A DNA stretch of 64,000 nt from Sphyrna mokarran (Eukaryota). Positions 10,459 through 64,000 of this stretch are shown in pieces. Position 1 is the stretch's first letter; the number at the start of each line of letters is the position of its first letter. The translations under genes and the position numbers were made by a program. Under the pieces are notes generated by a model. The model worked only from the letters and a program-made list of their open reading frames with translations, was not told where the DNA came from and did not search any database. The stretch is from positions 107,322,001 through 107,386,000 of the forward strand of contig JAGIQG010000009.1 of NCBI GenBank assembly GCA_024679065.1, in the 5' to 3' direction.

Positions 10459-10516
10459 ATGCGATTCACGCAGGGAATTGCTGTCAGCCGACTGATTTTC
10501 TTCGCCTTATGCAGTG
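10459..10516 (+). CDS. Gene A leader exon (signal peptide)
   Basis: gaagATG...AGT G|gtgagt, 58 nt, phase 1, MRFTQGIAVSRLIFFALCS; same length, phase and gaagATG context as the gene C leader. Confidence 0.8.
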
Positions 10517-13500
10517 GTGAGTACATATTTTCCCGAGCTATTACACAATGCAGCAAATATCGTTGGAGGATTTAATGGGCTGACTTTGGCAATTCGGGAA
10601 TGATCAGTCTGTTAACATTAAAATGATATGTCACTCTCTGCGAAATTTTACATTTAAACTCAACAGAATGAATGTAAAATTCTAGCATAACGATATGCGA
10701 TTCTGTCACTTCTTAGAGTTATTTCATCTTCCGACTTATCATTAAAAATAGTATTACTTGAAAAAGAAACCTCCCTCAGCCGGGCGTAAAACATATTGAA
10801 AGCCGAGTCTGTATAAAATAAGCGACTATAATTTGTGAGGATATCAGTTGAATCAGATTCAATTCGATCCATTTCCAGCGGTAACAATTTGTCGAGACGG
10901 CACGTTTAAAGAAGTAAATTCTCGGTAGCAATATGCAGCGTTGACTAATTCTGATGTGGAGATGCTGGCGTTGGAGTGATATAGTAAGAAGTCTCAATAC
11001 ACCAGGTTAAAATCCAACAGGTTCATTTGGAATCACGAGCTTTAGGAGTTCTGCTTCTTCTTCAGGTGACTCATCTCGGAAAACTCGTGATTCCAAATAA
11101 ACCTGTTGGACTTTAACTTGATTAGCTCTAGCCGGAAGGCAGTGGCACATTGGATATTAACAGTAAGGTAGTAATCCAGCGACTCGCGTTAGGCTCTGGA
11201 GGTATCACTTCGAATCTTACCACAGCAGGTGGTGGAACCTGGGGTAAAAGATCTAATGGTCACCAGGAATCGATTGTTGTTAAAACCCATTAGAAATGTC
11301 TTTAGAGAAGGTAGTTTGTCATCCTTACCTGGTAAGGTCTACATGTATATCATGTAACAAATGCATATATATTTGTTACAATTCTTATCTGTTTTTAATT
11401 CTTTGTGGGTGTCGTTATCTAGGCTACCATTTATTGTGCATCCCTAATAACCCTTGAGAAGGTGGTGATGAGCTTCATTATGAACGGCTGCAGTCCATGA
11501 GATGTCGGTACACTTACAGAACTGTTAGGGAGGGAGTTCAGTACTTTGACTTAAGCATCCTATATATTTGTATTTGTGCTTATCTGTACGTTTGTGTGTG
11601 TGTTCTTGTGCGTGTCTGTGTGACTGCGTGACAGAAATGTTGTTGCAGGATTTGCTGTTTCATCTTGAAAATAAATAAAGCAGATTTCTTACACAGATGA
11701 GGATTTTTTCAAGTATAAAACACTGCTCATTGCATAACTTTTGGGAAGAAGACAGATGGGAAGATGACTGATAACTGGTATCTTACTGACTCCAAGCATG
11801 GATTATTAGTCTCTTTGCTTGAAAGAAGAAGGAAAAGTTGTAGAAAGTACAACACTATCACATCAGTCAGGTGTCTATGCTAATTCTACACGTTTATCCA
11901 TCTGGAACTTATTTCAGTCTTTTATTTAAGCAGTTCTATATCTAAGCTAGCCAGATTTGGGCCATTTCAGTTTCGGACAGTGTGCAGAAGGACTGGGTGA
12001 CACGGTGATGCAGTGGTTCGTACTGCAGACTTACAGCGCTAGGGACCTATGTTCCATTCCCGGTTTGGGCCATTGTATGTACGGAGTTTTCATGTTCTCT
12101 TTGTGTTTGTGTGGGTTTCGTCCCACAGTCTTAAAGGTGTGCTGGTTAGGTGCAGTGTCCCGAACAGGCACCAGAGCTTGGCAACTAGAGGAATTTCACA
12201 GCAACTTCATTGCAGTGTTAAAGCAAGCCTTACTTGTAACTAATGAAGAAGTAATTTTAATAATTACCCCGAGAAAGCCGCTTATAGATGAAAGTGTTTG
12301 AATTATTTTTACTGTTATTTGGTTTCCGAGTGGCACTTAAATTGGGATTCCGATTAAACCAATTGTACTTTTATTTTATTCATTTTGGGGTATCGGGGGA
12401 AGCATTTAGTGCCGTATTTATACCTGAGAAGGTAGTGCTGTCATGGGACGAAGGACTGCAACTCTGGAATGACCAGAGATCTGAATTACTCTTACATCAG
12501 AGAACGATAAGGGAAGGTTAATTAGAGGTTTTGAAATTATGAGGGCCCTCAACAGAAAAATTAGGGAGGATTTCATTTTCATAAATGGGTCATCATCAAA
12601 TGGAATTTCAATTCTTAAGAATAGATCAAATGACATCTTTCGAATAGAAACATCATAATTTCGTGGATCGGACCTGGTCTGCGAAGAAAGAGAATGGAAG
12701 GGCCCAAATTGGATAACTACTTCAAACAGTTGTCATATACGCGATAGGCCGAATGGCATCTTTCTTGTCGCAGCATTGCAGGATAGCAGACAAGTTGAGC
12801 AAATAATTATAATAGCTTGAAGACGATGCATTTAGAATTCCCAAATCAAATTAATTGTTCCGTTTTGGCAACAAAATAGGATAATTTGAAGGATTGCTCT
12901 ATAGTTTCTCTTCCTGAAGAATTTCGCCAGTCGAAAAAATAAGGGAGTGAACTTCTTCGGTCAACTAAATTGTAAAAAGCAACAGACTCATGATGCAAAA
13001 TGTATAGGTTTCTGCGCCCGCCGTCTTGAACGTGGATACATGTAGTCCACAGTAAATCCAGCTTTTATAAAGGTAGCACGTGACTGATGCATGTGTGCAT
13101 AAATATTATGGGCTAATGCTTAATAACATGCTGAATAGAGAGTAACAGATTCCTCATTCTCTATATCACGCAGTCAGCTATTCCACATTGTAAAATTAGA
13201 GGAATTTAAAGTTAAAGATCAGGTTCCTCCTGCTATTTTTGAGTTTTCTCCCTTTTTAAACGCAGCTGGAAGCCAGTCGGCGTTTGGACAAGAAACAGCC
13301 AGCTGTAAAATCTATGGCTTGACAGAGAGAGACTCGGGCACCTATTACTGTGACAAAGACGGAAATAGACAAAATAGCACTGTGACAATTAAATGTGAGT
13401 AGTCATTTAAAATAATGATGAATAATGTGCATGATTCATGTTAATATAATTTCTCACTAAGATAAAACGGATGAAAATGCTCTACTGACCTGGAGTCTGC

Positions 13501-16500
13501 ATAAGGGTGGGTAATATTGCACCGGTATATGTGGAAAATCCCGTGAAACTCAAGCTGTTTAACAGCTTTGGAAAACGAGTGAAGAAAGATTTCCAGGGCG
13601 CCAAATGGTTGAATTAGGAAAAAAAAAACACACTCCCCTAGCCCTACTCCGCTTAATGTTTTGGCAAACACATCTCTCCTTTTAACCTGACGCTAGCATA
13701 CAGTCACACAATCCCTATGGTGTAGAAGGAAGCCATTCGGTCTATCGAGTGTGCACTGACTACAATCACACCCATGTCCTAGTCCCGTAACCCTTTATAT
13801 TTACCCTGTTAATCCCCAGATACTAGGTTTAGCATGGCCGCACAACTTTGGACTGTATTTGGGAGCAAACCAGAGCAGCCGAAGGAAATCAACGCAGACA
13901 CGGGGACACTGTGCAACCTCTAAACAGTCAGTGATCCCAGGTCGAATTGAACCCAGGTCTCTGGTGCTGTGAGGCAGCATTGCTAACCACTGCACCACCG
14001 TGCCGTTCCAGCTATGGGAGCGCGTCACCTAGTTTGGACCATTGACTTTGCCATCACACTTTCGGATCCTGACGTACAGCAATGGATTCCAAACTGGACT
14101 ACTACTGACATGTCCTTTCGCTGTAGTGGTGTTTTTGAACAGAAGAATCTAATTTCTCCATTTCCCTCTCATTCTTTCCCTTCGACTTGTATCTCGATTT
14201 CTTCCTCAATAATTCACGAAAATAAAATATATTTGCACAACCTCCTCCAAGCACATTCATCCACCCCACTCTGAAGGCGTTGTGATATCCCTCTTCCTGT
14301 AGTCCCTGTTCTGGTTTTTCCAGCAGTGCTAGTACACCACTTGTTCTGACCCTCCATACCATTCCACCCTTTGACATTTCTGCCTTCCAGCAGCAACTCT
14401 TTCGTTCTATTTTTAATTTTGTGTAGCTACGTGTGTTCCGCCAAATCTTTTCTCATTCTGCCGTCACACTTCACCCAAGCCCTACAGCAAGAGATTCTAG
14501 ATCTGTTTATTAATTCCTCTGACAACGTTATTTAATCACCAACGCTCTTTCTATACCGGATGCCCTTTGTGCTACCTCCCACAATTTCCAATGCTGGAAA
14601 ATAGACATTGTAACAAGACCCATTAAATTTCCTAAGCGCATCGACTGGACTTACAATGTTGCGCGGGAATGTGAAATGGACAATGACAAAATAGGTCCGC
14701 AATACACATGACAATTATTCTTACTTTCAACGCCTATAGGTTTAGAAACCACCTGAGTACTTTACAGATGAGTATTTTTGCCTGCCCATGTGCCCCTGTG
14801 TTAACGGTGCCTGTTATGGTACAATAAGCTAGGGACTGGAAAGATGGGAATTGCCTGACTGTCATCTACAAATGGTGATCTCTTCAGCGCTATAGTGACC
14901 CAGCGCGGATTTGGATGATTGTTGTACTAATAATCTTCAATGATTTCTTGAAATAGTAGCGTGGTCTCAGGTTAGCTCAATTTTCAGACCTTGTGGCAAA
15001 GCCACATTTGTCAGGGACCTGAATTCGATTCCCTCTTTGGATCACTTGATAGTGCAGAATCCGCACTTTCTCCGGGTGCTCTGTTTTTTTCCCACAGCCT
15101 GAAAGACGTGCTGGTTAGGTCAATGGCCATGCAAAATTCTCCTTCGGTGTACCCAAACAGACGCTGGAATGTGGCGGCTAGAGGATTTTCACAATAACTT
15201 CATTGCAATAATGTAATTAATGTCATCCTACTTGTGACACTAATAAACTTTAAAACCATAATTTCTGGTTCATAATCTTTTAGTTCAAGCATATCTTCAA
15301 GTTAGCCCAAAATGCGTCTCCGCCTATCCCCTGGCACAGAGAAAGGCTGAGTTGTGAATCCTGTTCTTAGCTACAGTTCGCTATCTTCCCCTCTCTTCCC
15401 CGCGCTCCCGCCACCCCCCCCCCCAGCTCTGTTTCAAGGAAGTGATGTTGGTGCAGGTCAGCGTCTGAAAGAGAGGGTGGTGATGTTGGTGGGAGTGAGT
15501 ATGTGGGGGTGAAAGGGATGGCGGTGGTGGGGGAGAGCTGTCGTAGAGAAAGGAGATGCGGGAAAGGTGGGCAAATGAGGGGGGGCAATGGAGGGGCGTG
15601 GTGAGGGTAGGGTGCGGCTGGTAAGCATCTAGAACACAGTTCTTGCTGGAATACTATGAAACTTATTTCTCAAAGTTGTGAGCATTTCTTCTGACTACAA
15701 AAAATGTTATATCTAATCCATAGTTCCATATCGATTGAAACTTTGCGGTTATCTTCTTTATGGTAGGCCTCGTTAATGAAACAGCGAGAGACATAACACC
15801 GATTGTTCTGAGCGTCCTGTCAGTAATGGCTGTCTTCATCGTATTTTTGACAGTTCGCGTGATCAGGGGAAAAGGAGGTTTGTGGTTTCGTTATATTTAA
15901 GCATACTGATCCAAATAGTGCCCTATTATAAAGGTCGAATGGAAGTGCTTCCGAGCCTGCGAGTATTCATTTGGTAACATGTCCAAATGATTATGTTTAA
16001 AGTCATCGAGTCATAGAGGTTTACAGCATGGAAACAGGCCGTTCGGCCCAACTTGTCCATGCTGCTCTTTTGTTTAACCCTGAAGCTAGCCCCAATTGCC
16101 CCCATTGGCCCATATCCCTCTATACCCATCTTACCCATGCTTTTTGAAAAACAAAATCGTACCCGCCTCTCTTACTACCTCTGGCAGCTTGTTCCAGACA
16201 CTTACCACACGCTGTGTGAAACAATTACCCTTCTGGGTCCTTTTGCATCTGTCCCCTCAAACTTCTAGGTTTAGACTCCCCTACCTTTGGGAAAGATATT
16301 GACTATCCAGCTGATCTATGCCGCTCGTTACTTTATAGACCTCTATAAGATCACCGTCAGTCCTTTTCGCTCCAGAGAGAAAAAAAAAATCCCAATCTAT
16401 TCAGCCTCTCTTGATAACACAAACCATCAAGTCCCAGTAGCATCCTCGTAAATCTTTCCTGCACTCTTTCTAATTTAATAATATCATTTATATAACAAGG

Positions 16501-19500: not shown

Positions 19501-19996
19501 CCTGAGCTGTAGCTATACCCACAGCGGGGAGGGAATTACAGGATTTTGATCATATGACCGTGAAAGATGCACAAGTTGGGCCAAAAAGCCTGTTTCCGTG
19601 TTGTAAGTCTCTGTGACTGTATGACTCTATAATCGGGGTGTGGGGTTCGTGAATTTTAATCGTGCCGCCAAACCGATTGTCCTTACAACATGAATTGAAT
19701 CAGGCGATAGTGCAGAATCTTGGTTTTAAACTAACGCAATAAATGGCAGAGAACGCAGAGAAAACTCGACATTTTTTTTGGTGACAATGACATTTTAACT
19801 CCTTTAGGTGTTTCCCCGTAATCATGTTGCCGAGGAAGAGTGTACGTATACACTGTTGAGTCTACATCGAGGGAAAAGGACTGACTGGCTAAACAGGAAT
19901 AAAAATCACCTGGAATATGCCTCAGTAAACTTACTCAGCATCAGCAATCCGCCACAAACTTCGGCGACCAGAGCTGGCGTACCCCAGTTCCCATGA
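10459..19996 (+). CDS. Gene A (spliced model): inhibitory-type IgSF receptor with leader, shortened V exon, neutral TM and two ITIM-type motifs. Exons 10459-10516, 13200-13394, 15767-15877, 18863-18891, 19808-19996
   Basis: Canonical GT-AG boundaries with compatible phases (1,1,1,0) give one open frame: MRFTQGIAVSRLIFFALCS-EEFKVKDQVPP...DSGTYYC...TVTIK-CLVNETARDITPIVLSVLSVMAVFIVFLTVRVIRGKG-DSSGVKTTTQ-VFPRNHVAEEECTYTLL...LEYASV...QFP*. The V exon acceptor is weak. Confidence 0.7.
10960..11120. repeat. Inverted-repeat (hairpin) remnant, Penelope-like
   Basis: ggttaaaatccaacaggttcatttggaatcacgagcttt ... aaaactcgtgattccaaataaacctgttggactttaact; hairpins of another family at ~1985-2190 and ~39295-39470. 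Confidence 0.65.
11995..12245 (+). mobile_element. tRNA-derived SINE (HE1/V-SINE type, alternative tail)
   Basis: A/B-box head; tail cagcaacttcattgcagtgtt...tacttgtaactaat. Confidence 0.75.
13200..13394 (+). CDS. Gene A internally deleted Ig V-type exon
   Basis: 195 nt, open phase 1-1 from aaattag|; contains A-strand-like FKVKDQVPPAI, SPF, and E/F-strand KIYGLTERDSGTYYC; strong donor AAAT|gtgagt; B-strand Cys and C-strand Trp are missing. Confidence 0.6.
13700..14005 (-). mobile_element. HE1/V-SINE-type SINE
   Basis: Reverse complement ggcacggtggtgcagtggttagca...gggttcaattc, V-domain core, CR1-like tail. Confidence 0.85.
14990..15250 (+). mobile_element. SINE fragment (alternative tail)
   Basis: B-box gaattcgattccc; tail cctacttgtgacactaataaa. 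Confidence 0.7.
15767..15877 (+). CDS. Gene A stalk and neutral transmembrane exon
   Basis: cttctttatggtag|...GGAG|gtttgt, 111 nt, phase 1-1; LVNETARDITP-IVLSVLSVMAVFIVFLTV-RVIRGKG (uncharged TM, basic stop-transfer, NET sequon). Confidence 0.8.
15998..17275 (-). mobile_element. CR1-type LINE fragment
   Basis: Minus-strand ORFs MEFNLDKCEVMHFG, LEYC.QFWSP, LERVQERFTRML. Confidence 0.9.
17380..17770 (+). mobile_element. Deu-domain SINE (SacSINE1/AmnSINE-like)
   Basis: tRNA-like head, then cagtgcaatattaagggagg..gcactgttggaggt..tgtctttc..tgagacattgaac Deu-like core; other fragments at ~19268, ~20440 (-), ~63220. Confidence 0.7.
18760..18891 (+). CDS. Gene A candidate alternative Arg-containing TM exon
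   Basis: ttcttgttttacag|...ACA A|gtaagg, 132 nt, open phase 1-1: EMRSILIATNPNIEYYLTNVFRCYMILLYSFYYRFQRRKDNDT; loosely resembles gene B TM exon (DPGVEFISTLLRTIIL). Confidence 0.4.
18863..18891 (+). CDS. Gene A cytoplasmic exon 1
   Basis: ttctttctattacag|ATTCC...ACAA|gtaagg, 29 nt, phase 1 to 0 (DSSGVKTTTQ); bridges the TM exon to the ITIM exon frame. Confidence 0.7.
19808..19996 (+). CDS. Gene A terminal cytoplasmic exon with ITIM-like CTYTLL and ITIM LEYASV
   Basis: ttttaactcctttag|GTG, phase 0; VFPRNHVAEEECTYTLLSLHRGKRTDWLNRNKNHLEYASVNLLSISNPPQTSATRAGVPQFP*. Confidence 0.8.
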   Translation: MFPRNHVAEEECTYTLLSLHRGKRTDWLNRNKNHLEYASVNLLSISNPPQTSATRAGVPQFP

Positions 19997-32444: not shown

Positions 32445-32504
32445 TTATGGAACATCAAACCTGCGTAACTCGTTGTAAATCTTCACATCGTCCAATTCCA
32501 AACC
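32445..32504 (-). CDS. Gene B cytoplasmic exon 2 (second half of ITAM)
   Basis: ttctattttttaacag|GGT TTG..., phase 0, GLELDDVKIYNELR; then either read-through RFDVP* (TAA 32447-32445) or donor CAG|gtttga at 32461. Confidence 0.82.
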   Translation of the reverse strand, partial: GLELDDVKIYNELRRFDVP

Positions 32505-35500
32505 CTGTTAAAAAATAGAAGAAATCTAATTGTTTTAGACAATTCTGTTTACAAAGGCTTGTTTTAATGCATTCAGGATAGCCTGGCAATGTTCTTTACC
32601 GTGTATGCGGAATCCACTTCAGAGTCAGTTTTATTGTTTGAAGAAACTGTAACGAAGTAATAAACGTGGATAAATAAATAACCAAAGAATCTGTTTTGAA
32701 TTGTAGCTATTGCAATGTTGCTTGATAAGGTTGCCTGTTTTGTGACCTTTCTGCCTATCTTCCCTCTATCTTTCTGTCTACCCACTTAAACAATTGTCTC
32801 TCTGTCTATCTATTTCTCACGATATATATTTCTCCATTATACAAATTCTTGGCTGTTAAATGCGAAATAAATCAGGACATTTCTCAAGACTGAACTATAA
32901 CCCCAACAAAGTGCATACATGACCACTTCCGAACCCACTGATAGACAGACACAGATCTTTCCAGCTGATAATGTGATTGTTATCTTATTGCTAGATTTCC
33001 CGGCTGCACCTGCCCCAAAACCGGAATATCGCGCCGAGATCAATTTGCGTTGTGCCGTCCCACCTGCCACGACTCGCATGATGGGCGGGACGGTAAAATT
33101 CCTCTGAAGTGTTCAACTGGCAATTTTTGTAAAAACCACATTGGAAGTCAAGTTATTCTGCTTATATTGGTATGTGGCATGAAAATATTTATTTTATTAA
33201 ACATGGGGGATTGTTAATGACGACGTTACAACAGAATGGGATATAAAAGTAAAGATATTTAAAATAGCTGTACAGGACCTTGTTGAGACTACATCTGGTG
33301 CATTTTGTTCAGCTTTGGACTCTTTCGAAAAAAATTACAATTGCATTAGATGCTGAGCTCATTCCTGGGAGTAAGGGCATATCTTATGAAGAAAGGTTGA
33401 AGGTTCTATTTACTTAATAGAGTCGATGCAGAGGATGCTTCCTCGTGTTCAGGAAGAAGAAGTAAGGGACAACGTTTAATAAAAAGGGGTCTCCCGTCTA
33501 CGAGGAGAAGAGGAGGATTTATTTAACCTCAGAGATACGTTATCACGTGGAATTCTCATTCCCAGAAAACAGTGAATGCAGGGTCATTGAATCTGAGTTA
33601 AGCAGTTCTTTTTTGCTAGACAGGAGAACATTCGGTTATGGGGAGGCAATCGCGAAAAAAGACCTGAAGCAGCAGTATGACTAATCATGGATCTTATGGA
33701 ATGGTGGAACAAGCTGGAAAGGCCGAGTGATAGACTCCCACATCTAACTCTTTGTTCCAAGATGCTGCCCTCCTTTCAAACACAATGCAGAAGAATACAC
33801 AGTATGTTAGCCAATAAGGAATAAGAAATCTAGTAGAAACTACTTCTCACGAACATAGAGGTAACTATCTACCGAAGTTGCGTATGACAATGATTTAAAG
33901 AAATGACAACACATATATTACCAGTTTTCAGGGGTGGGGACCTTACTTTTTATAAGAATACATACCATTGCGTTTCCATTTTAGTTTGCTTGCTAGTATT
34001 TTAAGTAGCAAGATAATTAACACAACAGCTGGCAAGATTATTGTTCTCAACAGTGTAGATATAAATTCAACCCCGGGGTCTAGGCAATTTGACGTCCTTC
34101 CTGAAAATATGAAAAGAAGACCGTGTTTTTGATTTTATGATCCGGCTAATATTAAGGAGCAAAATAATTGTTTTACACAAGATTGTAGAATACGTTTAGT
34201 AGGATACTGTAACTGTATTTGGAATATTTCTTTTCCACAGACATCGGAACGTCTGTCAGTGACCTATGTTCAACATAGCAGAAGAATTAATTGCACGTCT
34301 AAACTCAAGAACAGGGCTCTGGGACGGCATGGTGACACAATGGTTAGCACTGCTGCCTCACAACGCCAGGGACCCAGATTCGATTCCCGGTTGGGTCACT
34401 GTCTGTGAGGAGTCTGCACGTTTTCCCCGTGTCTGCATGGCTTTCCTCCTGGTGTTTCGCTTTTCTCCCATAGTCCAAAGATATGCAGGCTAGGTGGATT
34501 TGGCAAGCTAAATTGCACTTTGGTGTCAGGAAAACTAGCTAGGATAAATGTATGGGGTTATGGAAAGGGGACTGAGTGGGACTGTGGTTGGCGCAGACTC
34601 GTTGGGCTGAATGACCTTCTTCTACACTGTAGGATTCGATGTACATTGTAAGCTTCAGACATGTTGTAAACAACATGCGGTTTGGTTTTGGATCGCAGTT
34701 TTGTACTTTAATGTCAGTTCCAGCCTGTCAAAACTCCTGACCCCAACACCATTGTAGCGATTTAACTCTGTCGCAACCACTTTCGAGATCTCAGGAAACT
34801 CTCTGCGAGCATCAACAAGTAATCGAGTGCTTTGTCCCATCACGTACAGAATCAAATTGTAGCTTAAACTAGTCCTCGAAAAAAACATGCATTTCGAAAG
34901 TGTCTTAACGTCGTAAATAATGGACTTCATGACATGTAGGCCTGACGGAAAACGTGAGGAGGTAGAATAATATCGCAACATTTAGTCTTTACATCTGAAA
35001 TACTTAGTACTTTAATTAAAATAAACGCATTTCTCTATTTAACTTATGTGTGATACTAGTTTAGGTGTTCGTAGATGTAATCATCATCAAGCAAAGCACC
35101 TAAGTGGAGTTACTGAGGAAACGTGTGTGTTGACTTTCTGAGGGCTTCATCACACCACATAATAATAGCGCCTGAGGCTTCTGTATGAAATCGTGCCATC
35201 CGGTTACTTGATTTGATTTGATTTGATTTATTATTGCCACTTTTATTGGTATGCAGTGTTGTTCCCTGCGCGCCACAAAGACAAAACATACCATATTCAT
35301 AGAATTCATAGGAGAAAAGGAAAGGAGAGGGTGCAGAATATAGTGTTACAGTCATAGCGACGGTGAAGTGAAGAATAACTTACTGACAATAACTTAAAGT
35401 AAGTGTTATACTTGTATCAAGTTAACTTTACGCCATCTTATTTAAGGCACCGGTTTCTCTCCTTCGGTCACTCACGTAGTAATGGTCGGGGCTACTTGTG

Positions 35501-38009
35501 TTACAAGATGCACCTCAATTGATTGCATAAACAGTGTAATAGCAGGTAGTCAATTAATTGCACGGCAGTTAGAGCAGAAAATATTGGATCACAACAATTT
35601 AACTCGTGTAAAATTAGTGCAGTTTCTATCATGAAGCATGTTCATAGGTATTACTTACGTATTACTTCCAGATGGGTGCCATTTCCACTTGTCATTCCTG
35701 ATCCCGTTAAGCTTACATGACAGTAGTATGTATCTGAGTCTTTCTCAATCAACCCAGAGATACGAACATGCATTCTGTTGTTGGAAAATGCTTCGCTGTC
35801 TGATGTCTCCAGCCGATCTTTATAAAATGGGCTCTTGTCCAATCTGTAGCCATCTTGTTTATCCCGTGTCCAATAAGTTGCTCCAATTAGGATTTGGCTT
35901 ACTTCAAATTTCAAGGTACAATTCAGTGTCACCGACTCCCCCTCTACTGCCGTTATAGAGGGAGGGAACTGGTAAACTGTGAAATTTATCCTCCCATCTG
36001 TTGGGAAAAACACTTCAACTGTAAGCGAGATAATTACCAAATTCTAGGTGATACCCACAACTTGGGTTGCTAAGCGTAATTAACATCTGATATTATAAAG
36101 ATGGAAAGAAAATTAATAGAACGACGGTTAGCGGAAACGTCAAGTATATAAGCAGGAAGCGTTTCAAAAATATAGCAAACCAGTCAGAATCTGAAACAGA
36201 ATGCCGGTTATTGTTGGGTTGTGTGCGCAGATTTTTGATCAGACCTACCTTGCATTAAGTTGATCTTTTTCTACACCCTAGCTATCAATGCAATACTACA
36301 TTCTGCACTCTCTCACTTCCTTCTCTATGCTTTTTCTGTATAGCACGGAAGAAACAATACCTTCAACTGTTTACAAATACATATGACAACAATAAATCAA
36401 ATCAAACCAGAAAATCAAATTATTCTTTGGATTAGCTGTCAGGATAATGTTGGGTTGTGTTGTTTGATTGCCGCTAACTGACACTAATCCTCAAAACCCA
36501 ATAACAATATGAATTGGAACTAAATCCCAAAAGCCATTTAAGTACACATGGCAGTAATAGGTGTCTGAGTATTTCTCAGCCAAGTCGGAGATGTTAATGA
36601 ATATTCTGTTGTTAGCAAATGATTGTCTGTCCGATCCCTCCAGCCGACCTTTATAAAATGGGCTCTTGTCCAGTGTCTAACCATCTAGTTTAGTCGCGTC
36701 CAAGGTGGTGATCCGATAAGGGATAGGCTTTCATCAATTTCCAAGGCATAGTTCAGCGTCGCCGACTCCCCCTCTGCTGCCGTTAGAAAGGGAGGAACTG
36801 ATAAACGACGAAATTGAGCTCTCCATCTACTGAAATGGGGGCAAATTAATTTTGAAAAGCTACCCGTTCATTTTTCTGTGGTAAATCCAACTACATTCCT
36901 CATCTATAGACACATAGAATCTATATTCCTCCGGGGTGTGTATAAGGCTTACTGTTTCTCTTGATATCTATGAATCATCTCTAATTATCTGTACTTTGAT
37001 ATGTAGGGCAATTTTTCAAATATAATTTGTAGAACGTGTGAATCTCGAAAATGTAGTAAACAATGGGGAGGATTTCAAGATGTAGTCAGACTGGTAAAAT
37101 TGCAGACTCTTGCAAATACCATGTAATGTAGAGAGGCGTGAAGTCTTACAATTAGTCTGGACGATAAGGAGATTAAATATAAGCAGAATGGAGCTATTTA
37201 CCCAGGGCTGCAGGAACAGAGAGACATGCGGAGTCAAGATCAAGTCAGTCGGAAATTAGTGTTCCAGTAAATGCTTATTTAAATGTGATTTAATTAATCC
37301 TGCATTGTTGTCTTGACAGTGTCACGCCTATATGTCTAAATTTAAGGCGGCTTTTAAATAACACTTTACAATGGAAACACACATACCTAATCCAAACCCA
37401 AGCATTATCCACAATGTGGAATATTCACTGAATTCCATATGATTTCCAGAACCTTAGTGTAAGCTGACTCTGTTGCAGCAACATGAGACGCGATACTTAA
37501 AATAAATGGTTGGTAACCGTTAGTTGAAATTTAAAATGTATGCGAGAAAGGGACTTGTAACCTTCATTAATGATGGGGTTCGAATGAAATGTATCAGCAA
37601 TTTGGCTGCCTGATTTGAGAAAAAATGTTTTTCGTTTCTTTATTTCTGTAGCATCTGATATATATATAATATATATATAAGATATACATATAAACTTGCA
37701 TAAAATTATCTTGCAATTTGTGTAAACCATTTCAGATCAATGGTCAAATCAAGGATGCCGAGTCAATGTATGTAAAAAATGGATCAGCATTACTTTTGAG
37801 GAGAACACAACGTAAGCGAATGTCAACCAAAAAGACAATTTTTTATCCTCTTAAATCATACTAAGAGAGCACTGGCAATCTATAAATTACAGTACAATAT
37901 TGGTCCAAGCGTAATGTCACGATCACCTCACCTTTGGTGAAATAACCTCATAATGTGATAAAGGGAAATCCCAGTAAATAGATATTGAAATAATTGTTGC
38001 ATTTACCAT
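32445..38009 (-). CDS. NCR3-like: Gene B (spliced model): NKp30/NCR3-like VJ-type receptor with charged TM and cytoplasmic ITAM. Exons 38009-38007(?), 37207-37150, 35997-35659, 34100-33966, 32646-32600, 32504-32445 (or to 32461 if spliced onward)
   Basis: Phase-compatible GT-AG exons: M-PWVNSSILLIFNLLIVQTN-YGRINFTVYQFPP...YYCHVSLTGSGMTSGNGTHLEVI-RRTSNCLDPGVEFISTLLRTIILPAVVLIILLLKILASKLKWKRN-VSSNNKTDSEVDSAYT-GLELDDVKIYNELRRFDVP*. Confidence 0.8.
32600..32646 (-). CDS. Gene B cytoplasmic exon 1 (first half of ITAM)
   Basis: tacttcgttacag|...TACACG|gtaaag, 47 nt, phase 1 to 0; VSSNNKTDSEVDSAYT. Confidence 0.82.
33966..34100 (-). CDS. Gene B stalk/TM exon with Arg (and Lys) in the TM
   Basis: cttttcatattttcag|...AATG|gtatgt, 135 nt, phase 1-1; TLLRTIILPAVVLIILLLKIL; stalk Cys. 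Confidence 0.88.
34321..34641 (+). mobile_element. HE1/V-SINE-type SINE in the gene B V-TM intron
   Basis: gggacggcatggtgacacaatggttagcactgctgcctcac...ctgtaggattc. Confidence 0.88.
35659..35997 (-). CDS. NCR3-like: Gene B VJ-type Ig V-set domain exon
   Basis: tttttcccaacag|...ATAC|gtaagt, 339 nt, phase 1-1; GESVTLNC, YW, DSDTYYC and germline-joined J-like GNGTHLEV. Confidence 0.93.
36520..36826 (-). pseudogene. Pseudo-V exon paralogous to the B and C V exons, in the leader-V intron of gene B
   Basis: DGELNFVVYQF / TAAEGESATLNY (Cys to Tyr) / LDKSPFYKGRLEGSDRQSFANNRIFINISDLAEKYSDTYYCHV; two frameshifts, an in-frame TAG, no J-like end or donor. Confidence 0.88.
37150..37207 (-). CDS. Gene B probable leader exon (ATG supplied by an upstream exon)
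   Basis: tctctctgttcctgcag|CCC TGG...AAT T|gtaaga, 58 nt, phase 0 to 1, hydrophobic PWVNSSILLIFNLLIVQTN; candidate ATG|gtaaat at 38009-38007. Confidence 0.55.
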
Positions 38010-38018
38010 ATCTTTCAA

Positions 38019-38560: not shown

Positions 38561-39519
38561 TTAATTTTTCGAATAGAATCCATCGTCAATACAGGGCACA
38601 TTTTGTGCTGTGCTGTTGAAGCCAAGTACTGTCAATATCTTGAGGGCTGATTTCAGCAGTGACATTACTTGTGGGCTTGTATTGACGACACAGCATATGC
38701 AGATTGTGCTGCCACTGAAAGTGAAGTGAATGGTTTGCATTCAATGCGGTTGCGTAATACTGAACACTTTTTTTTACAATTGCACGGGACATGTTACTCA
38801 GGAAATTTAGAGTGGGATAATGCAGGATTTTGCATCTGTCAGTAATGAGTCTTTATAATAAGATGTTCCCTGTTAAATGCTTCTAAAGTGGACATCACTT
38901 CTTTCGGCGTAGCTTCTGACTTGACCGTAAGTGAACTTCGGGCAAGACCATGGGGAATGGAAGAATGCATAATTAAACTTAGTTTTTAAATGTGAATCGA
39001 ATGATATCTTTCTGCTAAAATGCCAGTACAAACAGTGAAAGAACACATTACAATGAAAGTTATTGGACTATGTTATCTTGCATGAAGGTGTAAAGTGCAG
39101 CACCAATCTTATCAACAATAAAAAGATGCCTTCTGAAAAGTTATGTGCTACTTTATGCACTCAATTAGAGAGGTGTCAATGACTTGAGAGCGGTGCTGGA
39201 GTAATAACGAAGAACATATGCTATGCTTTATTTGAGCCTGTTCAGGGGACACATTTAGGGGACACATTTAAAAGATTCTCAGAAAATTTTAAAAAAAGCA
39301 AGTGCTGAAAATATCTTTGGAGAAACCGAGTTAACGTTTTGAGTCCAATATGCAGATTCGGAACAGTCACTCCGTTTCTCCCTCCACTGGTTTTGCGAGA
39401 CCTGCAGAACTTTTTCAGCACTTCGTTTCATTTCAGATTTCCAGCTCCCGTACTACCTTGATTTCGATTTACAGAGAATCGCAAGTTGGATGAAAAATAT
39501 ACAAAAGAAAAATTAAAAG

Positions 39520-43312: not shown

Positions 43313-43458
43313 NNNNNNNNNNNNNNNNNNNNNNNNNNNNNNNNNNNNNNNNNNNNNNNNNNNNNNNNNNNNNNNNNNNNNNNNNNNNNNNNNNNNNNNN
43401 NNNNNNNNNNNNNNNNNNNNNNNNNNNNNNNNNNNNNNNNNNNNNNNNNNNNNNNNNN
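43313..43458. other. Assembly gap (146 N)
   Basis: Run of n. Confidence 1.
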
Positions 43459-44150: not shown

Positions 44151-44151
<1 letters not shown>

Positions 44152-59178: not shown

Positions 59179-59504
59179 TATTGTCAATAGAAATCTTTGT
59201 GCTTAATTCTGCTGAAGGGGGACCTGAACTCACGATCTCTCATTGAAGGAACGATGTCCTGTGCTATGTGGGAAGGGGGTGCAAAATTGAACATGTATTG
59301 GGTTGCTTGCGAAATGTTAACGCAAGGCACGTGATGGCAGTTCATAACTCTAAACATTACCTGAGTAATATAAGTGCCTGGATTGTAGACACGCAATGAA
59401 CTGAATGGAAACTCTTCGTCACATTTGTAACCAGGCACCTTTTCCCTCCCTTCTCGTCATCTTCAACAACATCGTCATGGAAAAACCTTAGTGTGTGGAG
59501 GGGG

Positions 59505-59533
59505 CGGGGGGGGGGGGGGGGGGGGGGGGGGGA
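59505..59533. repeat. Poly-G tract within a G-rich segment upstream of gene C
   Basis: About 28 consecutive G. Confidence 0.9.
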
Positions 59534-59871: not shown

Positions 59872-59929
59872 ATGCCATTAAGTCAACAGCTCACTCTCCT
59901 GCATTTCGTTATCTTTGCAACGCACACCG
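59872..59929 (+). CDS. Gene C leader exon
   Basis: gaagATG...ACC G|gtgagt, 58 nt, phase 1; RUNX-type AACCACA about 95 nt upstream. Confidence 0.82.
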
Positions 59930-62900
59930 GTGAGTTAATTCTATTTTTTTCTGCTTGTGGATGACATCTTTGCACTACAGTAACGTGCTAATTTTAATTG
60001 CAAATTTCGCAGAAGCTGATTTCGGAAAATATTCCCACTTTCCCGTCATCCTTACAGTTTACAGAAGGTTGTTGTACTCATAACGAAATAGCATTCCCAT
60101 TGTATTTAGCAATTAGAAAACGCTCTTCTCGGCAGGATTGCGATTGTTTTCCGGAGTCGAGAACACAGGGATAAAACTTTCCAAAGGTTCCCTCGCTACT
60201 TGGCACTAATTCTGAAGGCTGTTTCTGTTGATCGAGTTTCCGCCGAAATTGCGACGGAAGATGGACAGAACCCGCTAGAGAAATTTCGGGGTATAGTTTT
60301 TATTAACAGCAAGTTGGCTGAGGGACATTGTTGACAATGATTGACAATGAGGTCAGTGCAAAATAGACCATTTGGAAGCATGTTTATATATTTCGACGTG
60401 GGATGGAGAGCTCTACAAATTCACTGCTCTTTATTCATCATTACAAGTATGGTTATCATTTTTAATCGTTATTTTATTTCATTCCTGGGATGTATCCGCC
60501 ATTGCCTTTTGAAGTTTGTGCTCATTCTCAGCCCAAGCTTCTGTGTCAGCCAGGTCTTGCAATTTTGGGATTACCCATATGGAGCGAGGCGGACCAGCAT
60601 AACGAAATATTTGCTTGCAATCACGACGCACGCTCGCACAACCAAACATTAAACTGACAACATAACCCAACAATAACTTGCCCGCACAACCAAACATTAT
60701 CCTGATAATAAAATCCATCATTAACCTGGTAACACAACCCAACATTAACCTGATAACACAACCCAACATCAACATGTCCGCACAACCTGACATTAACCTA
60801 ACAACACAATCCAACATTAATCAAACAACAGCAGCCAAACATTAGTCTGACAACGCCATCTGATATTAGCCTGATAGCACAGACATTGATCTGACAACAT
60901 AACTAAACATTGGCCTGACAGCACAACCAAACATTAATCGGACAACACAACCGAGCATTAGCCTGACAACACAATCAAATATTAACTGGGCAACACAACC
61001 CAACAATAACCGATCAATATAATCCAGTATTAACCGAACGTTACCGGAACAACACAACCCAACATTAATCGAACAATTCAACCAAACATCAACCTAACGA
61101 TACAACCCCGCATTAATCGAACAACATAACTCGACATTAACCGAACAAGTCAACGTTAATTTAATAATCGATCCAAAGAATAATCTGCTCACATAACCCA
61201 ACAATAATCTGACATCCTGTTTAAGATTCTGACTGGTTTGCTAGATATTTCAAATGCTTTCTACTTGTATACTTATATACGTTTCAGCTATCCATCGTTC
61301 TTTTAATTTTCTTTCCACCTCTATAATATAAATTGATAATTAGACTTAGAATCACAAGTTGTGGATAGCATCTAGGATTTGGGAATTATTTCGCTTACAG
61401 TTGAATGTTTTTTTCCAACAGATGGGAGGATGGATTTCACAGTTTACCAGTTCCCTCTCTTTATAACGGCAGCAGAGGGGGAGTCGGTGACACTGAATTG
61501 TGCGATGAAATTTGAAGCAAACCCAATCTTAATCGGAGCAACTTATTGGACACGGGGTGAACAAGATGGCTACAGACTGGACAAGAGCCCATTTTATAAA
61601 GATCGACTGGAGAGTTCGGATAGCAAATCATTTGCCAACAATAGAATATATATTCGTATCTCTAGGTTGATTGAGAAGGATTCAGATACATATTACTGTC
61701 ATGTATCCTCCATTGGATCAGAAGTGAGAAGTGGATATGGTACCCATCTGGAAGTGAGGAGTAAGTAATAAGTAGCAACAAGAGTTCTTTAAAAGCGTCT
61801 CCAATTTTACACAGTGATTCGACTGCCCCGGCCCAGGAACAGCATTGTTTTAATTTGTAGACTGTGATAAATCAACTGACCTCATTGCAGTACAGAAACC
61901 TGGGCGCCATTGATACGCAGATCATTCCAAGTAAATCCGCTGATCATACTAAAATGCTGCACGTCGGAATATATCTGTAATTGTATCTGGGAACGAGACT
62001 GGAGCTGACGCCAACCATTATGTAGAGCACCTGCAGCCTACTATACAACACAATTGGGTATTCCGTTTTCTGGAAGCCAGTTGAAACTAAAATAGAGCGC
62101 AATGGAAAACGGGTTTCTGATGCAATAAAACCTATTTCCATACCCAATGCCGACCAGGCTGAGCTAGGATCCTTTGTTGCTTGGAAGCAAGGAGATCTAT
62201 TGGGCTCAATGTTGAGCATTGCCCTTTGGGAATTTTCAGTGACACCAAAACATCAGGAAGCAGAGGAGAAATACAGGGAGGGCTTGATCATAGAACGCCG
62301 ACAGTGTAGGAGGAGGCCAATTGGCCCACTAAGCCTGCACAGACAACAATCCGACCCAGTTCGTATCCCCATAACCCCACATATTTACTCTGCTAGTTCC
62401 CCAGACACTAAGGGGCAACTTAGCATGACCAATCCATCCAGTACATCTTTCCTCGGATTACCCGGAGGAATCCCACGCAGACACAAGAAGAACATGCCAT
62501 CTCCATAGAGTGACCCAAGTTGGGAATCGAACCCAGATCCCTGGTGCTGTGAGGCAGTAGCGCTAATCACTATGTCACCATGCCGCTCCAATGACGAGAG
62601 AGCAGGCAGAAATGTCTAGAGGTAGAAGGAGGCATTTAGACACGGCCCCTTACACTGAATTGCTACTAGGAGCGCACTACAGTCGCAAATCATCCAGATT
62701 CCATTTCTATTTTAGTCGTTATAGCACCAGCCCAGGACACATTATTTTATTTTATTTGATTTATTATTGTCACATGTATTGTGATACAATGAAAATATTT
62801 TTCTTGCGCACTATATAAACAAAATATACCGTTAATAGAGTATACAGTGGAGAAGAAAAAGAGAGAATGCAGAATATAGTGTTAGAGTCACAATGAGGGT

Positions 62901-63936
62901 GTAGAGAAAGATCATTTAATATGTGATGGAACCATTCACAAGTCTGATGACAACAGAGAAGAAGCTGTTCTTGAATCAGTTGGCACGTGTTCTCAGACTT
63001 TTGTCTTTTTCCATACGGAAGAAAGTTGAAGAAGTATGTCCAGTGTGTATGGAGACCTTGATTATGCTGGCTGCTGACCTGAGACAGCGGGAAGTGTAGA
63101 CGGAGTCAGTGGATAGGAGGTTGATTTGTGGATTACACTCGCGACCCTTTGTAGTTTCTTGCAGTCTTGGTCAGAGCAGGAGACATAAAGCACAAAAATC
63201 CAGGTTGGCTGTCCAGTGTCAAATGGAGGTAATGCTGCACTGTTGCAATGGAGGTGAGGACTATTATACTAACGTTGAACCTGGTGAATGTAAAAAATCC
63301 CATTGCAATTTCAAGACAGATACCCCCATGTCCTGGCCAAAAGCTGCTCCTCAATCACCATCTTAAAACAAAAATAAATTGCTGAGTTTTGCATTGTTAT
63401 TTTTGTAAGCTTCCTGTACGCAAATCACTTGCCTTTCCTAAATTGCAAAAGTGGCTGCTCTTCCAAAATCTTCACCCGGCTTTAAAGTGAATTGGGATGT
63501 ACTGAGGTCGTACAAGGCGCTGTAGAAAGCAAATTGTTATTTATGTGTATAAATTTACAATCGTGCCTTTCCAAAAATGCAAACAACATCAGATCAAAAT
63601 TTTAAAATTTAGTTTCATTTCTTTATTCCAGAGAAAAATAACAGGAATCCTTCCCCGATACTTGGACTGGGAGGTGCTTCAGTTTTGCTGAGTATAACCG
63701 TCATTTTTCTTATATGTGGACTCTGCTGGCAAAACAAAGGTGTGTGTTCCTGTCAAACCTACTTTAGTAGTATGTTTTCGCTATAGGGGCAGTTGCTCTA
63801 CTGCTATGAGATCTAACCAGGTAAATGCTTCCAACGAACTTGTCACTTTTTTTGTGTGATCGGAAACCCGATTAGTATGAGCAATTATTTTAAAACACGC
63901 CATTTCCTTCAGAATTATACAACTGTTCCAATTTAG
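59872..63936 (+). CDS. NCR3-like: Gene C (spliced model, 3' end unresolved): NKp30/NCR3-like VJ receptor with neutral TM. Exons 59872-59929, 61422-61760, 63632-63739, then uncertain tail
   Basis: Phase 1 junctions give MPLSQQLTLLHFVIFATHT-DGRMDFTVYQFP...YYCHVSSIGSEVRSGYGTHLEVR-KKNNRNPSPILGLGGASVLLSITVIFLICGLCWQNK. Confidence 0.8.
60630..61215. repeat. Degenerate ~24-bp minisatellite in gene C intron 1
   Basis: Unit ~acaacacaacccaacattaacctg repeated >20 times; explains the spurious (MLGCVVRL)n ORFs. Confidence 0.9.
61422..61760 (+). CDS. NCR3-like: Gene C VJ-type Ig V-set domain exon
   Basis: ttttttccaacag|...AGGA|gtaagt, 339 nt; canonical Cys/Trp/DxxxYYC and J-like GYGTHLEV. Confidence 0.93.
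62290..62586 (-). mobile_element. HE1/V-SINE-type SINE in the gene C V-TM intron
   Basis: Reverse-complement head, core and tail. Confidence 0.85.
63632..63739 (+). CDS. Gene C neutral TM exon
   Basis: tttctttattccag|...AAAG|gtgtgt, 108 nt, phase 1-1; ILGLGGASVLLSITVIFLICGLCW, no charged residue. Confidence 0.82.
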
Positions 63937-64000
63937 AAAGACACCATTAGGCCGTATGCCGGCTTTTCGTAGGAACAACTGATCTACTATCACTCGCTGA

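What the first reader, a model, noticed from the sequence alone, without database searches (positions are those of the whole stretch)
10459..64000. Paired activating/inhibitory cluster of non-rearranging VJ-type (NKp30/NCR3-like) receptors in a probable shark
Seen: three spliced genes with related V exons but different signalling modules. A has a neutral TM and two ITIM-type motifs; B has an Arg TM and an ITAM; C has a neutral TM and a broken ITAM-like tail. Pseudo-exons lie among them. Known: mammalian NKp30 is a single VJ-type domain with a TM Arg and a short motif-free tail, signalling via CD3zeta/FcRgamma; paired systems (KIR, LILR, CD300, fish NITR) combine similar ectodomains with opposite tails. 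Inference: this is a paired-receptor family built on an antigen-receptor-like VJ domain. The TM and tail exons are mostly invisible in the ORF track, so automated annotation could miss them. Multi-copy shark NCR3-like genes are known, so novelty would lie in the signalling architecture.
Basis: partly seen in the sequence, partly recalled or inferred. Interest (0 to 1): 0.88.

Follow-up and report, generated by a model that had tools for sequence, protein, structure and literature searches.

The report
Shark NKp30-like receptor genes, opposite signalling
This stretch of a shark genome holds several copies of an NKp30-like immune receptor gene: one looks built to switch cells on, one resembles relatives that switch cells off, and one is half-destroyed; this pairing is familiar in other receptor families.

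Summary
Partly confirmed. The window holds two intact VJ-type V exons, one frameshifted pseudo-V exon and one half-deleted V exon. The intact V domains match human NKp30 best by sequence and by predicted fold. In a tree they sit with nurse-shark NCR3 and a Mustelus asterias protein.

Gene B (minus strand, 38583 to 32445) is a clean five-exon model with an Arg-bearing transmembrane (TM) exon. Two micro-exons encode a canonical ITAM, split after 'YT'. Under strict but post-hoc criteria this pattern arose in 1 of 2000 shuffles.

Gene C has a neutral TM exon 89% identical to a Mustelus protein with an ITIM-type tail.

Gene A is colinear with a Heptranchias two-ITIM protein. It lacks about 49 residues of its V domain and has no frame-setting exon before its tail, so it is probably decaying.

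B and C share DNA only around the V exon (86% identity). That is the pattern expected of paired receptors.

No RNA run was listed, so no splice junction is verified. None of the 23 shark NCR3-like proteins I fetched has an ITAM. The key paper (Kinlein 2021) could not be read. The N gap is intergenic, and no model crosses it.

The parts
10459..10516 (+). Gene A leader exon (58 nt, ATG, phase-1 donor gtgagt)
   Evidence: It aligns weakly with the leader of Heptranchias P0159 (E 0.13).
13200..13394 (+). Gene A truncated V exon. An alternative in-phase acceptor with a better pyrimidine tract lies at 13266. Only the A-strand remnant and the E-F-G strands remain.
   Evidence: It has the YYC motif but no first Cys or Trp. 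Pfam V-set gives 17.8 bits, below the cut-off of 26.
15767..15877 (+). Gene A TM exon (111 nt, phase 1 in and out, no charged residue in the hydrophobic core)
   Evidence: It is similar to the P0159 TM (E 0.002). The donor gtttgt is weak.
19808..19996 (+). Gene A tail exon, with the degenerate CTYTLL, the canonical ITIM-type LEYASV, and a stop codon
   Evidence: It is homologous to the P0159 tail (E 1.6e-6). It is read in phase 0, which does not fit the TM exon's phase-1 donor.
38526..38583 (-). Gene B leader exon (58 nt, phase-1 donor gttagt)
   Evidence: It has the same length as the leaders of A and C. Its likeness to NCR3 leaders is weak.
36533..36845 (-). Pseudo-V exon inside gene B's leader-V intron
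   Evidence: It has two frameshifts and one stop, the first Cys is replaced by Tyr, and the J-like motif is lost.
35659..35997 (-). Gene B VJ-type V exon (339 nt, phase 1 in and out)
33966..34100 (-). Gene B stalk and TM exon (135 nt). It has a membrane-proximal Cys, an Arg near the outer end of the hydrophobic stretch, and a Lys near the inner end.
   Evidence: There is a marginal likeness to the Arg-bearing TM of Heterodontus NCR3-like P0161 (E 0.044). Read-through past the donor stops after 7 codons.
32821..32852 (-). Possible alternative first-half ITAM micro-exon (32 nt, ends ...EIYI)
   Evidence: It is mutually exclusive with 32600-32646 by phase. Unverified.
32600..32646 (-). Gene B cytoplasmic micro-exon 1 (47 nt, phase 1 in, phase 0 out, ends ...DSAYT)
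32445..32504 (-). Gene B terminal coding exon (begins GL, holds YNEL, stop at 32445-32447)
43313..43458 (.). Assembly gap (146 N) in the B-C intergenic region
   Evidence: No exon model crosses it.
59872..59929 (+). Gene C leader exon (58 nt)
   Evidence: It is 72% identical to the P0004 leader over 25 residues.
61422..61760 (+). Gene C VJ-type V exon (339 nt)
   Evidence: It is 85% identical to Mustelus asterias P0004.
63632..63739 (+). Gene C TM exon (108 nt, neutral). The following exons lie outside the window.
   Evidence: It is 89% identical to the P0004 TM region over 37 residues.

Best explanation
The window is part of a shark (probably carcharhiniform) cluster of NCR3/NKp30-family genes. 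Each gene has a 58-nt leader exon, a single non-rearranging VJ-type V exon, and a TM exon, followed by short cytoplasmic exons.

Gene C is the common neutral-TM type. In relatives this type carries ITIM/ITSM-like tyrosine motifs and would recruit SH2 phosphatases (inferred).

Gene B carries almost the same V domain on a different chassis: a stalk Cys, an Arg in the membrane segment, and a short tail. The tail is either a 7-codon read-through or, through two micro-exons, a canonical ITAM that would recruit Syk/ZAP-70-type kinases (inferred). Either way B is the activating partner.

Sequence shared by B and C is confined to the V exon and its immediate flanks. The ectodomain was therefore recently copied or gene-converted between an inhibitory-type and an activating-type gene. 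That is how paired receptor families usually arise.

Gene A belongs to a second, two-ITIM subtype and is decaying. The extra V copy in B's first intron is dead.
For: Family:
- PDB sequence searches put NKp30 first. Foldseek ranks 1-4 are NKp30, with TM-score 0.75-0.78. That used a model with pLDDT 83.6, although the other four models scored 38.9-66.3.
- The top representative hit is nurse-shark NCR3. Named neighbours include NCR3 of a possum, lizards and a tortoise.
- In a 68-row tree, B-V, C-V and Mustelus P0004 form a group with SH-aLRT 99. With Scyliorhinus added, support is 97.

Gene B:
- All eight splice sites are GT-AG and the phases fit, giving 639 nt.
- The split ITAM was found in 1 of 2000 shuffles and in 1 of 78 real 3-kb tiles, that tile being B's own.

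Gene C:
- The TM exon is 89% and the V exon 85% identical to P0004, whose tail holds LHYAKV and DEYATI.

Gene A:
- Four exons are colinear with P0159.

Pairing:
- The homology block is 61179-61812 against 36236-35606 only.
- The exon is 86% identical with no gaps, and the 5' flank is 82% identical. dN/dS is 0.54.
Against: - No RNA evidence exists. No run was listed, so read laying could not be used.
- With lenient criteria, an ITAM could be 'spliced' in 53 of 200 shuffles. The strict criteria were set after I had seen the case. A first version with a stricter pyrimidine rule missed the real exons altogether.
- No canonical polyA signal lies within about 1 kb after B's ITAM stop. One lies about 440 nt after the TM exon, which favours a short-tail read-through product.
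- 0 of 23 fetched shark NCR3-like proteins holds an ITAM, so B's tail has no support from conservation.
- C's tail is unseen.
- Deep branches of the tree are weak: possum and lizard NCR3 fall elsewhere at support 71.
- B's Arg lies near the outer edge of the hydrophobic stretch and might sit at the interface.
Confidence: 0.7

Rival explanations
1. Gene B is a classical adaptor-dependent activating receptor. The TM exon is its last coding exon (read-through, 7 further codons), it signals only through an Asp-bearing ITAM adaptor paired with its Arg, and the ITAM micro-exons are chance or unused.
For: - Read-through stops after 7 codons.
- An AATAAA lies about 440 nt downstream of the TM exon, while the first signal after the ITAM stop is about 1 kb away.
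- The lenient test shows that ITAM-like splices are easy to find by chance (53 of 200 shuffles).
- Annotated shark and tetrapod relatives with a charged TM have short tails without motifs, for example P0051, P0055 and P0098.
- 0 of 23 shark NCR3-like proteins has an ITAM.
Against: - The strict split-ITAM pattern occurs in 1 of 2000 shuffles, and only in B's own tile among 78 real tiles.
- Both micro-exons have GT-AG sites and pyrimidine tracts, fit the phase of the TM donor gtatgt, and end in a stop 6 codons after the second YxxL.
Confidence: 0.3
2. The genes in this window are mostly non-functional remnants of a fast-turnover multigene family. The apparent pairing is then a by-product of duplication and decay, not a working activating/inhibitory pair.
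For: - Of four V-like exons, one is a frameshifted pseudo-exon and one is half-deleted.
- Gene A cannot be read into its tail.
- dN/dS between the two intact V exons is 0.54, and exon identity (86%) is only a little above that of the 5' flank (82%).
- There is no expression evidence.
Against: - The two intact V exons have no indel in 339 nt, while their flanks have gaps.
- They keep both Cys, the Trp, YYC and the GxGT J-like motif.
- Every exon of B and every visible exon of C is open with canonical splice sites.
- C's closest relative is an annotated Mustelus gene.
Confidence: 0.15
3. The V domains belong to another VJ-type family, such as SIRP-like or multi-V shark receptors, and not to NCR3.
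For: - Shark multi-domain proteins named turtle-like, SIRP-beta-like or pIgR-like score E 1e-27 to 1e-21. That is better than tetrapod NCR3, at 5e-7 to 1e-4.
- SIRP chains follow NKp30 closely in the PDB profile search, 1e-9 against 2e-11.
- Mammalian and lizard NCR3 do not join the shark group in the quick tree.
Against: - NKp30 is first in all three PDB comparisons.
- The nearest named protein is the nurse-shark NCR3 entry.
- The single-V plus TM architecture, and an Arg near the outer end of the TM, match named NCR3 of a possum (P0113) and its turtle relatives (P0055, P0098).
Confidence: 0.1

Closest known systems
Shark NCR3 (NKp30) family. This covers nurse-shark NCR3 (P0006) and RefSeq 'NCR3-like' or uncharacterised proteins of Mustelus asterias, Scyliorhinus canicula, Chiloscyllium, Heterodontus and Heptranchias. 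It was described by Kinlein et al. 2021 (Immunogenetics 73:333). I saw only the reference listing; its content is recalled.
   Same: - A single VJ-type V exon, 56-86% identical in protein.
- The same leader, V and TM exon logic.
- C's TM exon is 89% identical to Mustelus P0004.
- A's four exons are colinear with Heptranchias P0159.
   Different: - Gene B's tail with an ITAM is not found in any of the 23 fetched shark family members.
- Those members carry ITIM/ITSM-like motifs, or a Lys or Arg in the TM with a tail without an ITAM.
- Gene A's V domain is internally deleted.
Mammalian NKp30 (NCR3). PDB entries 3NOI, 3PV6 and 6YJP; full-length possum NCR3 is P0113.
   Same: - It is the best sequence and fold match for the V domain, at 31-32% identity and TM-score about 0.77.
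- It has a J-like GxGT motif.
- It has an Arg near the outer end of the TM segment (P0113).
   Different: - By recall, mammalian NKp30 is a single gene with a short tail without motifs, and it signals through CD3-zeta/FcR-gamma.
- Here there are several genes. One has a possible ITAM of its own, and others are of the neutral-TM type that is ITIM-tailed in relatives.
Paired activating/inhibitory Ig-like receptor families (KIR, LILR, CD300, SIRP alpha/beta, teleost NITR, skate MDIR, hagfish APAR). All features of these are recalled.
   Same: Neighbouring genes have near-identical ectodomains (77% in protein) but different TM and tail modules. Shared DNA is limited to the ectodomain exon.
   Different: - The ectodomain here is an antigen-receptor-like VJ domain of the NCR3 family.
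- The activating member may carry its ITAM in cis as well as a charged TM residue.
FcR-gamma / CD3-zeta / DAP12 adaptor chains (recalled)
   Same: - A short ectodomain stub with a membrane-proximal Cys, and a charged residue in the TM.
- An ITAM encoded by two exons, with the break after 'YT' before 'GL'. I recall the same break for FcR-gamma.
   Different: - The adaptors carry Asp, not Arg, in the membrane and have no Ig domain.
- No significant sequence match for B's TM exon was found in the PDB or Pfam.
- The ITAM exons are too short to search.

Membership tests
NCR3 / NKp30 family | A single extracellular V-set Ig domain encoded by one exon, with a germline-joined J-like end (GxGT.L.V) | tested here: met
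   B and C each have a 339-nt V exon. Pfam V-set E-values are 1.2e-13 and 2.7e-11. The ends read GNGTHLEV and GYGTHLEV. Gene A fails this test: 17.8 bits, below the cut-off, and no first Cys or Trp.
NCR3 / NKp30 family | The V domain is closer to NKp30 than to other V families | tested here: met
   NKp30 is first by phmmer (1.2e-9, next hit 1.6e-8), by profile (1.9e-11, next hit 3.3e-10), and by Foldseek (ranks 1-4). The best of 1.84 billion representatives is nurse-shark NCR3. The margins are only one to two orders of magnitude, and deep tree branches are weak.
NCR3 / NKp30 family | A basic residue in the TM segment for adaptor pairing (the mammalian type) | tested here: inconclusive
   B has an Arg, followed by 14 hydrophobic residues and then a Lys. 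This placement resembles possum NCR3 P0113 and turtle relatives. C and A have none. Whether the Arg is buried cannot be told from sequence.
NCR3 / NKp30 family | Linkage to the MHC (reported for sharks; recalled) | not testable with these tools
   No MHC gene was recognised in the window. 0 of 10 large non-receptor ORFs had a Pfam hit.
NCR3 / NKp30 family | Binding of a B7H6-type ligand | not testable with these tools
   This needs protein experiments.
Paired activating/inhibitory receptors | Highly similar ectodomains on genes with opposite signalling modules, in one cluster | tested here: inconclusive
   The V domains of B and C are 77% identical, and their TM exons are unrelated. B is of the activating type. 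C's inhibitory tail is inferred only from P0004 and is not in the window.
Paired activating/inhibitory receptors | Both partners are expressed and signal as predicted | not testable with these tools
   No RNA run was listed.
ITAM-bearing receptors | A cytoplasmic YxxL/I-x6-8-YxxL/I, with an acidic residue before the first Tyr (consensus recalled) | tested here: met
   DSAYT joined to GLELDDVKIYNEL reads in frame across two GT-AG micro-exons. The pattern arose in 1 of 2000 shuffles under strict post-hoc criteria but in 53 of 200 under lenient ones. Use of the exons is unverified.
ITIM-bearing inhibitory receptors | A cytoplasmic [S/I/V/L]xYxx[I/V/L] (consensus recalled) | tested here: inconclusive
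   Gene A's tail exon has LEYASV plus the degenerate CTYTLL. It cannot be joined in frame to the TM exon. Gene C's tail is unseen.

The most novel reading that the evidence does not exclude
Gene B is an expressed, self-signalling NKp30: a germline VJ-domain receptor that carries both an adaptor-pairing Arg in the membrane and its own FcR-gamma-style two-exon ITAM. Its ectodomain would be kept matched to a neighbouring inhibitory gene by exon-scale gene conversion. That would be a natural 'receptor plus adaptor in one chain' form of the family thought to be closest to the non-rearranging ancestor of antigen receptors. It would suggest that cis-ITAM signalling was available to such VJ receptors in early jawed vertebrates.
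Probability: 0.3. Interest if true: 0.7.

Novelty: new variant of a known kind. Interest (0 to 1): 0.5.

Why it matters
NKp30 is, from recall, the one NK receptor traceable across jawed vertebrates. Its VJ domain is often discussed as a relative of the ancestor of rearranging antigen receptors.

Suppose sharks run this family as a paired activating/inhibitory system, and one member couples the VJ domain directly to an ITAM. That would give a concrete, testable example of how antigen-receptor-like domains were wired to signalling before, or beside, the CD3/FcR-gamma adaptor solution. It would also show exon-scale copying of the ligand-binding domain between opposing receptors in a very old lineage.

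If B's ITAM exons are unused, the locus is an ordinary example of a known multigene family.

Tried and rejected
- RNA evidence. The look-up of sequencing runs on 32300-38299 listed no run, so read laying was never called.
- Literature. Kinlein 2021 (PMC8273117) and Flajnik 2012 (PMC3709836) are not held. Five full-text searches found no readable paper on the signalling motifs of shark NCR3. I therefore cannot say whether an ITAM-bearing shark NCR3 is in print. Supplements were not consulted.
- A bridging micro-exon for gene A, like 'TSGHVQATAQ' of P0159. An exhaustive AG...GT search between 15870 and 19807 gave no convincing candidate (best local score 24).
- Further copies of B's TM or ITAM exons, or of A's TM or tail exons, in the window. 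None was found.
- Other V-like exons. 68 V-domain queries found only the four places already listed.
- PDB and Pfam searches with the TM and tail exons gave nothing meaningful.
- Rfam gave no match.
- Ten large ORFs outside the genes gave 0 Pfam hits.
- The ITAM shuffle test with a 9-of-12 pyrimidine rule missed the real exons. I repeated it with 8 of 12. The criteria were chosen after seeing the case.
- The reading of C's last 261 nt as an ITAM-like tail is rejected.
- A search for B-like ITAM exons in 9100-9800 found nothing.


Full report
**What is in the window.**
- The window is 64 kb at about 41% G+C, with one run of 146 N at 43313-43458.
- Six-frame searches with the two obvious V-like ORFs, and later with 68 V domains from relatives, find V-like sequence at only four places:
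  - 35659-35997 on the minus strand (gene B);
  - 61422-61760 on the plus strand (gene C);
  - about 36533-36845 on the minus strand;
  - about 13200-13394 on the plus strand (gene A).
- The first two are intact 339-nt exons with a polypyrimidine-AG acceptor and a gtaagt donor, both in phase 1. They are 77% identical in protein. Pfam V-set E-values are 1.2e-13 and 2.7e-11.
- The third needs three reading frames, has an in-frame stop, has Tyr in place of the first Cys, and has lost the J-like end. It is a dead exon lying inside gene B's first intron.
- The fourth keeps only a remnant of the A strand fused to the E-F-G strands. About 49 residues are missing relative to its closest relative, Heptranchias perlo P0159, including the first Cys and the conserved Trp. 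It scores 17.8 bits against Pfam's cut-off of 26.

**The gap.** The N run lies between the leader exons of B (38583) and C (59872), with non-coding DNA on both sides and a TG-rich stretch on the right. No exon model crosses it, so no reading frame depends on it. Only the statement that B and C are neighbours depends on the scaffold.

**Gene B (minus strand).**
- The model has five exons: leader 38526-38583, V 35659-35997, stalk and TM 33966-34100, micro-exon 32600-32646, and terminal coding exon 32445-32504.
- All junctions are GT-AG with pyrimidine tracts. The lengths are 58, 339, 135, 47 and 60 nt, which keep one frame of 639 nt, or 212 codons plus a stop.
- The TM exon encodes a membrane-proximal Cys. 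It then has an Arg near the outer end of the hydrophobic stretch, 14 hydrophobic residues, a Lys, and a basic stop-transfer stretch.
- The two micro-exons end in DSAYT and begin with GLELDDVKIYNEL. Together they give YTGL-x7-YNEL, which fits the ITAM consensus as I recall it. The stop comes six codons later.
- The break after 'YT' before 'GL' is, from recall, the position of the intron in FcR-gamma.

**Is the ITAM more than chance?** I tested the 3 kb downstream of the TM exon.
- Lenient rules: any in-phase exon pair or single exon giving YxxL/I-x6-9-YxxL/I. The real DNA has 3 solutions, and 53 of 200 dinucleotide shuffles have at least one. The bare possibility of an ITAM proves nothing.
- Strict rules: an acidic residue before the first Tyr, an intron exactly after 'Yx', phase-1 entry, a stop within 12 codons, and 8 of 12 pyrimidines at both acceptors. 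The real DNA has 2 solutions. Only 1 of 2000 shuffles has any. Of 78 real 3-kb tiles of the window on both strands, only the tile holding B's tail has any.
- A first run with a 9-of-12 rule missed the real exons and found nothing anywhere.
- The strict rules were written after I had seen the case, so the numbers are indicative, not a probability.
- The second real solution is an alternative first-half micro-exon at 32821-32852, ending in EIYI. By phase it excludes the other one.
- Evidence against the ITAM being used:
  - Reading through the TM donor gives a stop after 7 codons.
  - An AATAAA lies about 440 nt further on, while the first polyA-type signal after the ITAM stop is about 1 kb away.
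- A classical product with a charged TM and a short tail is therefore a serious rival. In either case B has the hallmarks of an activating receptor.

**Gene C (plus strand).**
- The visible exons are leader 59872-59929, V 61422-61760 and a neutral TM exon at 63632-63739, all in phase.
- Identity to Mustelus asterias LOC144497821 (P0004) is 72% for the leader, 85% for the V exon and 89% for the TM exon.
- P0004, S. canicula P0003, nurse-shark NCR3 P0006, Chiloscyllium P0009, Heptranchias P0160 and Heterodontus P0168 all continue after the TM with '[V/A]ILRL...'. Their tails hold motifs such as LHYAKV, VQYAKV, VEYATI and DEYATI.
- No such exon lies in the 261 nt left before the window ends.
- The YEQL and similar strings there are interrupted by stop codons.
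- C's tail is therefore outside the window.

**Gene A (plus strand).**
- The exons are leader 10459-10516, truncated V 13200 (or 13266)-13394, neutral TM exon 15767-15877, and tail exon 19808-19996.
- All four align in order with Heptranchias P0159, at E 0.13, 7e-6, 0.002 and 1.6e-6. P0159 has LHYSQL and LEYASV in its tail.
- A's tail has LEYASV, which fits the ITIM consensus as I recall it, and CTYTLL, which does not.
- The TM exon leaves in phase 1 and the tail exon is read in phase 0. A direct splice gives a stop after four codons.
- P0159 bridges this gap with about 11 residues. I found no equivalent exon in A.
- With a V domain that cannot fold as an Ig domain and an unresolved frame, A is most likely a decaying member of a second, two-ITIM subtype.

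**Family.**
- The single V1 sequence finds NKp30 chains first in the PDB (1.2e-9 to 1.5e-9, next hit 1.6e-8).
- A profile of nine shark sequences does the same (1.9e-11 to 5.2e-11; the next hits are 3.3e-10 and SIRP-beta at 1.1e-9).
- An AlphaFold model of B's V exon has a best pLDDT of 83.6 and pTM of 0.79. The other four models score only 38.9-66.3. Its Foldseek ranks 1-4 are NKp30 structures (E 3.4e-11 to 1.4e-10, TM-score 0.75-0.78, 31-32% identity), ahead of TCR, SIRP and VNAR at about 1e-9.
- Among 1.84 billion representatives there are 196 hits at E up to 1e-3. Only one is below 1e-30, and that is the nurse-shark protein named NCR3.
- Named neighbours include NCR3 or NCR3-like proteins of Heterodontus, Heptranchias, a tortoise, lizards and a possum.
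- Shark multi-domain proteins with automatic names such as 'turtle-like' or 'SIRP-beta-like' also appear, and they score better than tetrapod NCR3.
- In a quick 68-row tree (114 columns, SH-aLRT only), B-V, C-V and Mustelus P0004 form an unresolved trio with support 99. Scyliorhinus joins at 97, then the nurse and bamboo sharks.
- Deeper branches are weak, and possum and lizard NCR3 fall elsewhere at support 71.
- I left near-duplicate isoforms and fragments out of the tree (P0001, P0002, P0008, P0013, P0030, P0037, P0162-P0166), as well as any hit whose matched stretch covered fewer than 85 query positions.
- The NCR3 label is therefore the best-supported one, but the margins are modest.
The closest proteins are from Mustelus asterias, so a carcharhiniform shark is likely.

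**Pairing.**
- DNA shared by the B and C loci is limited to 61179-61812 against 36236-35606. That is the V exon plus about 240 bp upstream and 50 bp downstream. Scattered interspersed repeats are the only other matches.
- Within the block, the exon is 292 of 339 nt identical with no gap. The 5' flank is 199 of 243 identical with 4 gap columns. Identity collapses to about 41% beyond it.
- dS is 0.236, dN is 0.129 and dN/dS is 0.54.
- The TM and tail exons of B and C are unrelated.
- B's TM has only a marginal likeness to the Arg-bearing TM of Heterodontus NCR3-like P0161 (11 of 28 identical, E 0.044 for the single comparison).
- This is what one expects if a ligand-binding exon was recently copied or converted between an inhibitory-type and an activating-type gene. 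That mechanism is inferred, not shown.

**Novelty.**
- That sharks have many divergent NCR3 genes is known from Kinlein et al. 2021. I saw only its reference listing and recall its abstract. The paper is not held.
- Public annotations already show neutral-TM/ITIM-type members and Lys- or Arg-TM members. A mix of inhibitory and activating forms in this family is therefore visible in public data.
- What I did not find is an ITAM. 0 of 23 named shark NCR3-like proteins match the ITAM pattern. Only 4 of all 173 fetched proteins match it, and none of those is a single-V NCR3-like protein.
- The protein searches are limited by word sharing, clustering and length windows, and I could not read the key paper. 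I therefore cannot claim it is unpublished.
- I rate the finding as a new variant of a known kind, conditional on B's micro-exons being used.

**Other notes of this scan.**
- Notes on the same window agree with what I found for B's ITAM (s1-886405) and A's half-deleted V (s1-886524).
- One note, on alternative TM exons and dual-frame coding in A (s1-886449), I could follow only in part. Heptranchias isoform X2 (P0037) does read the tail exon in another frame. In gene A, that direct splice simply terminates.
- Notes on neighbouring DNA (s1-887873, s1-887759, s1-886631) say that further NKp30-like genes lie on both sides. One is an Ig-less gene with an Arg-TM exon just upstream. I could not check these.

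**What was left out.** The joined spliced models were not sent to any search or folding tool; every search was exon by exon. No RNA reads were laid.

Noticed in passing
window 32821-32852 (minus): A second possible first-half ITAM micro-exon. It is 32 nt, has a good acceptor and a gtgaga donor, and ends in EIYI. It would also complete an ITAM with the terminal exon at 32504. By phase it excludes 32600-32646.
   Followed up: partly
window 33945-33965 and about 33523 (minus): Read-through past gene B's TM-exon donor stops after 7 codons. An AATAAA lies about 440 nt downstream, so a short-tail isoform without an ITAM is possible.
   Followed up: partly
window 60637-61148: A 24-bp minisatellite lies in gene C's leader-V intron: about 16 copies at 68% match, followed by related 48- and 24-bp arrays. 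Short matches to it lie at 36419-36469 in gene B's equivalent intron.
   Followed up: no
window 12001-12123, 13714-14011, 18225-18320, 19098-19245, 34319-34641, 62287-62590: Copies of an interspersed repeat, 66-79% alike, are scattered through the introns of all three genes. Rfam finds no tRNA- or SINE-type family at its gathering thresholds.
   Followed up: partly
window 59500-59532: A run of about 33 G within a G-rich 14-bp array lies some 340 bp upstream of gene C's start codon.
   Followed up: no
window 35062-35100 (minus): A short open stretch reads GALLDDDYIYEHL between B's V and TM exons. It loosely resembles the second-half ITAM exon (7 of 13 identical, E 2.2). It is probably chance.
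   Followed up: no
leader exons 10459-10516, 38526-38583, 59872-59929: All three leader exons are exactly 58 nt and end in phase 1. Gene B also has a further in-frame ATG six codons upstream.
   Followed up: partly
proteins P0037 / P0159 (Heptranchias perlo, relatives of gene A): The two annotated isoforms differ by a small exon. Skipping it makes the tail exon read in another frame, which removes both ITIM-type motifs.
   Followed up: partly
protein P0118 (unnamed, 792 aa, among the distant V-set hits): A multi-Ig protein model that looks like two fused gene copies. Each copy ends in YTGLDLQTRSNDVYYTL, an ITAM that begins with the same YTGL as gene B's.
   Followed up: no
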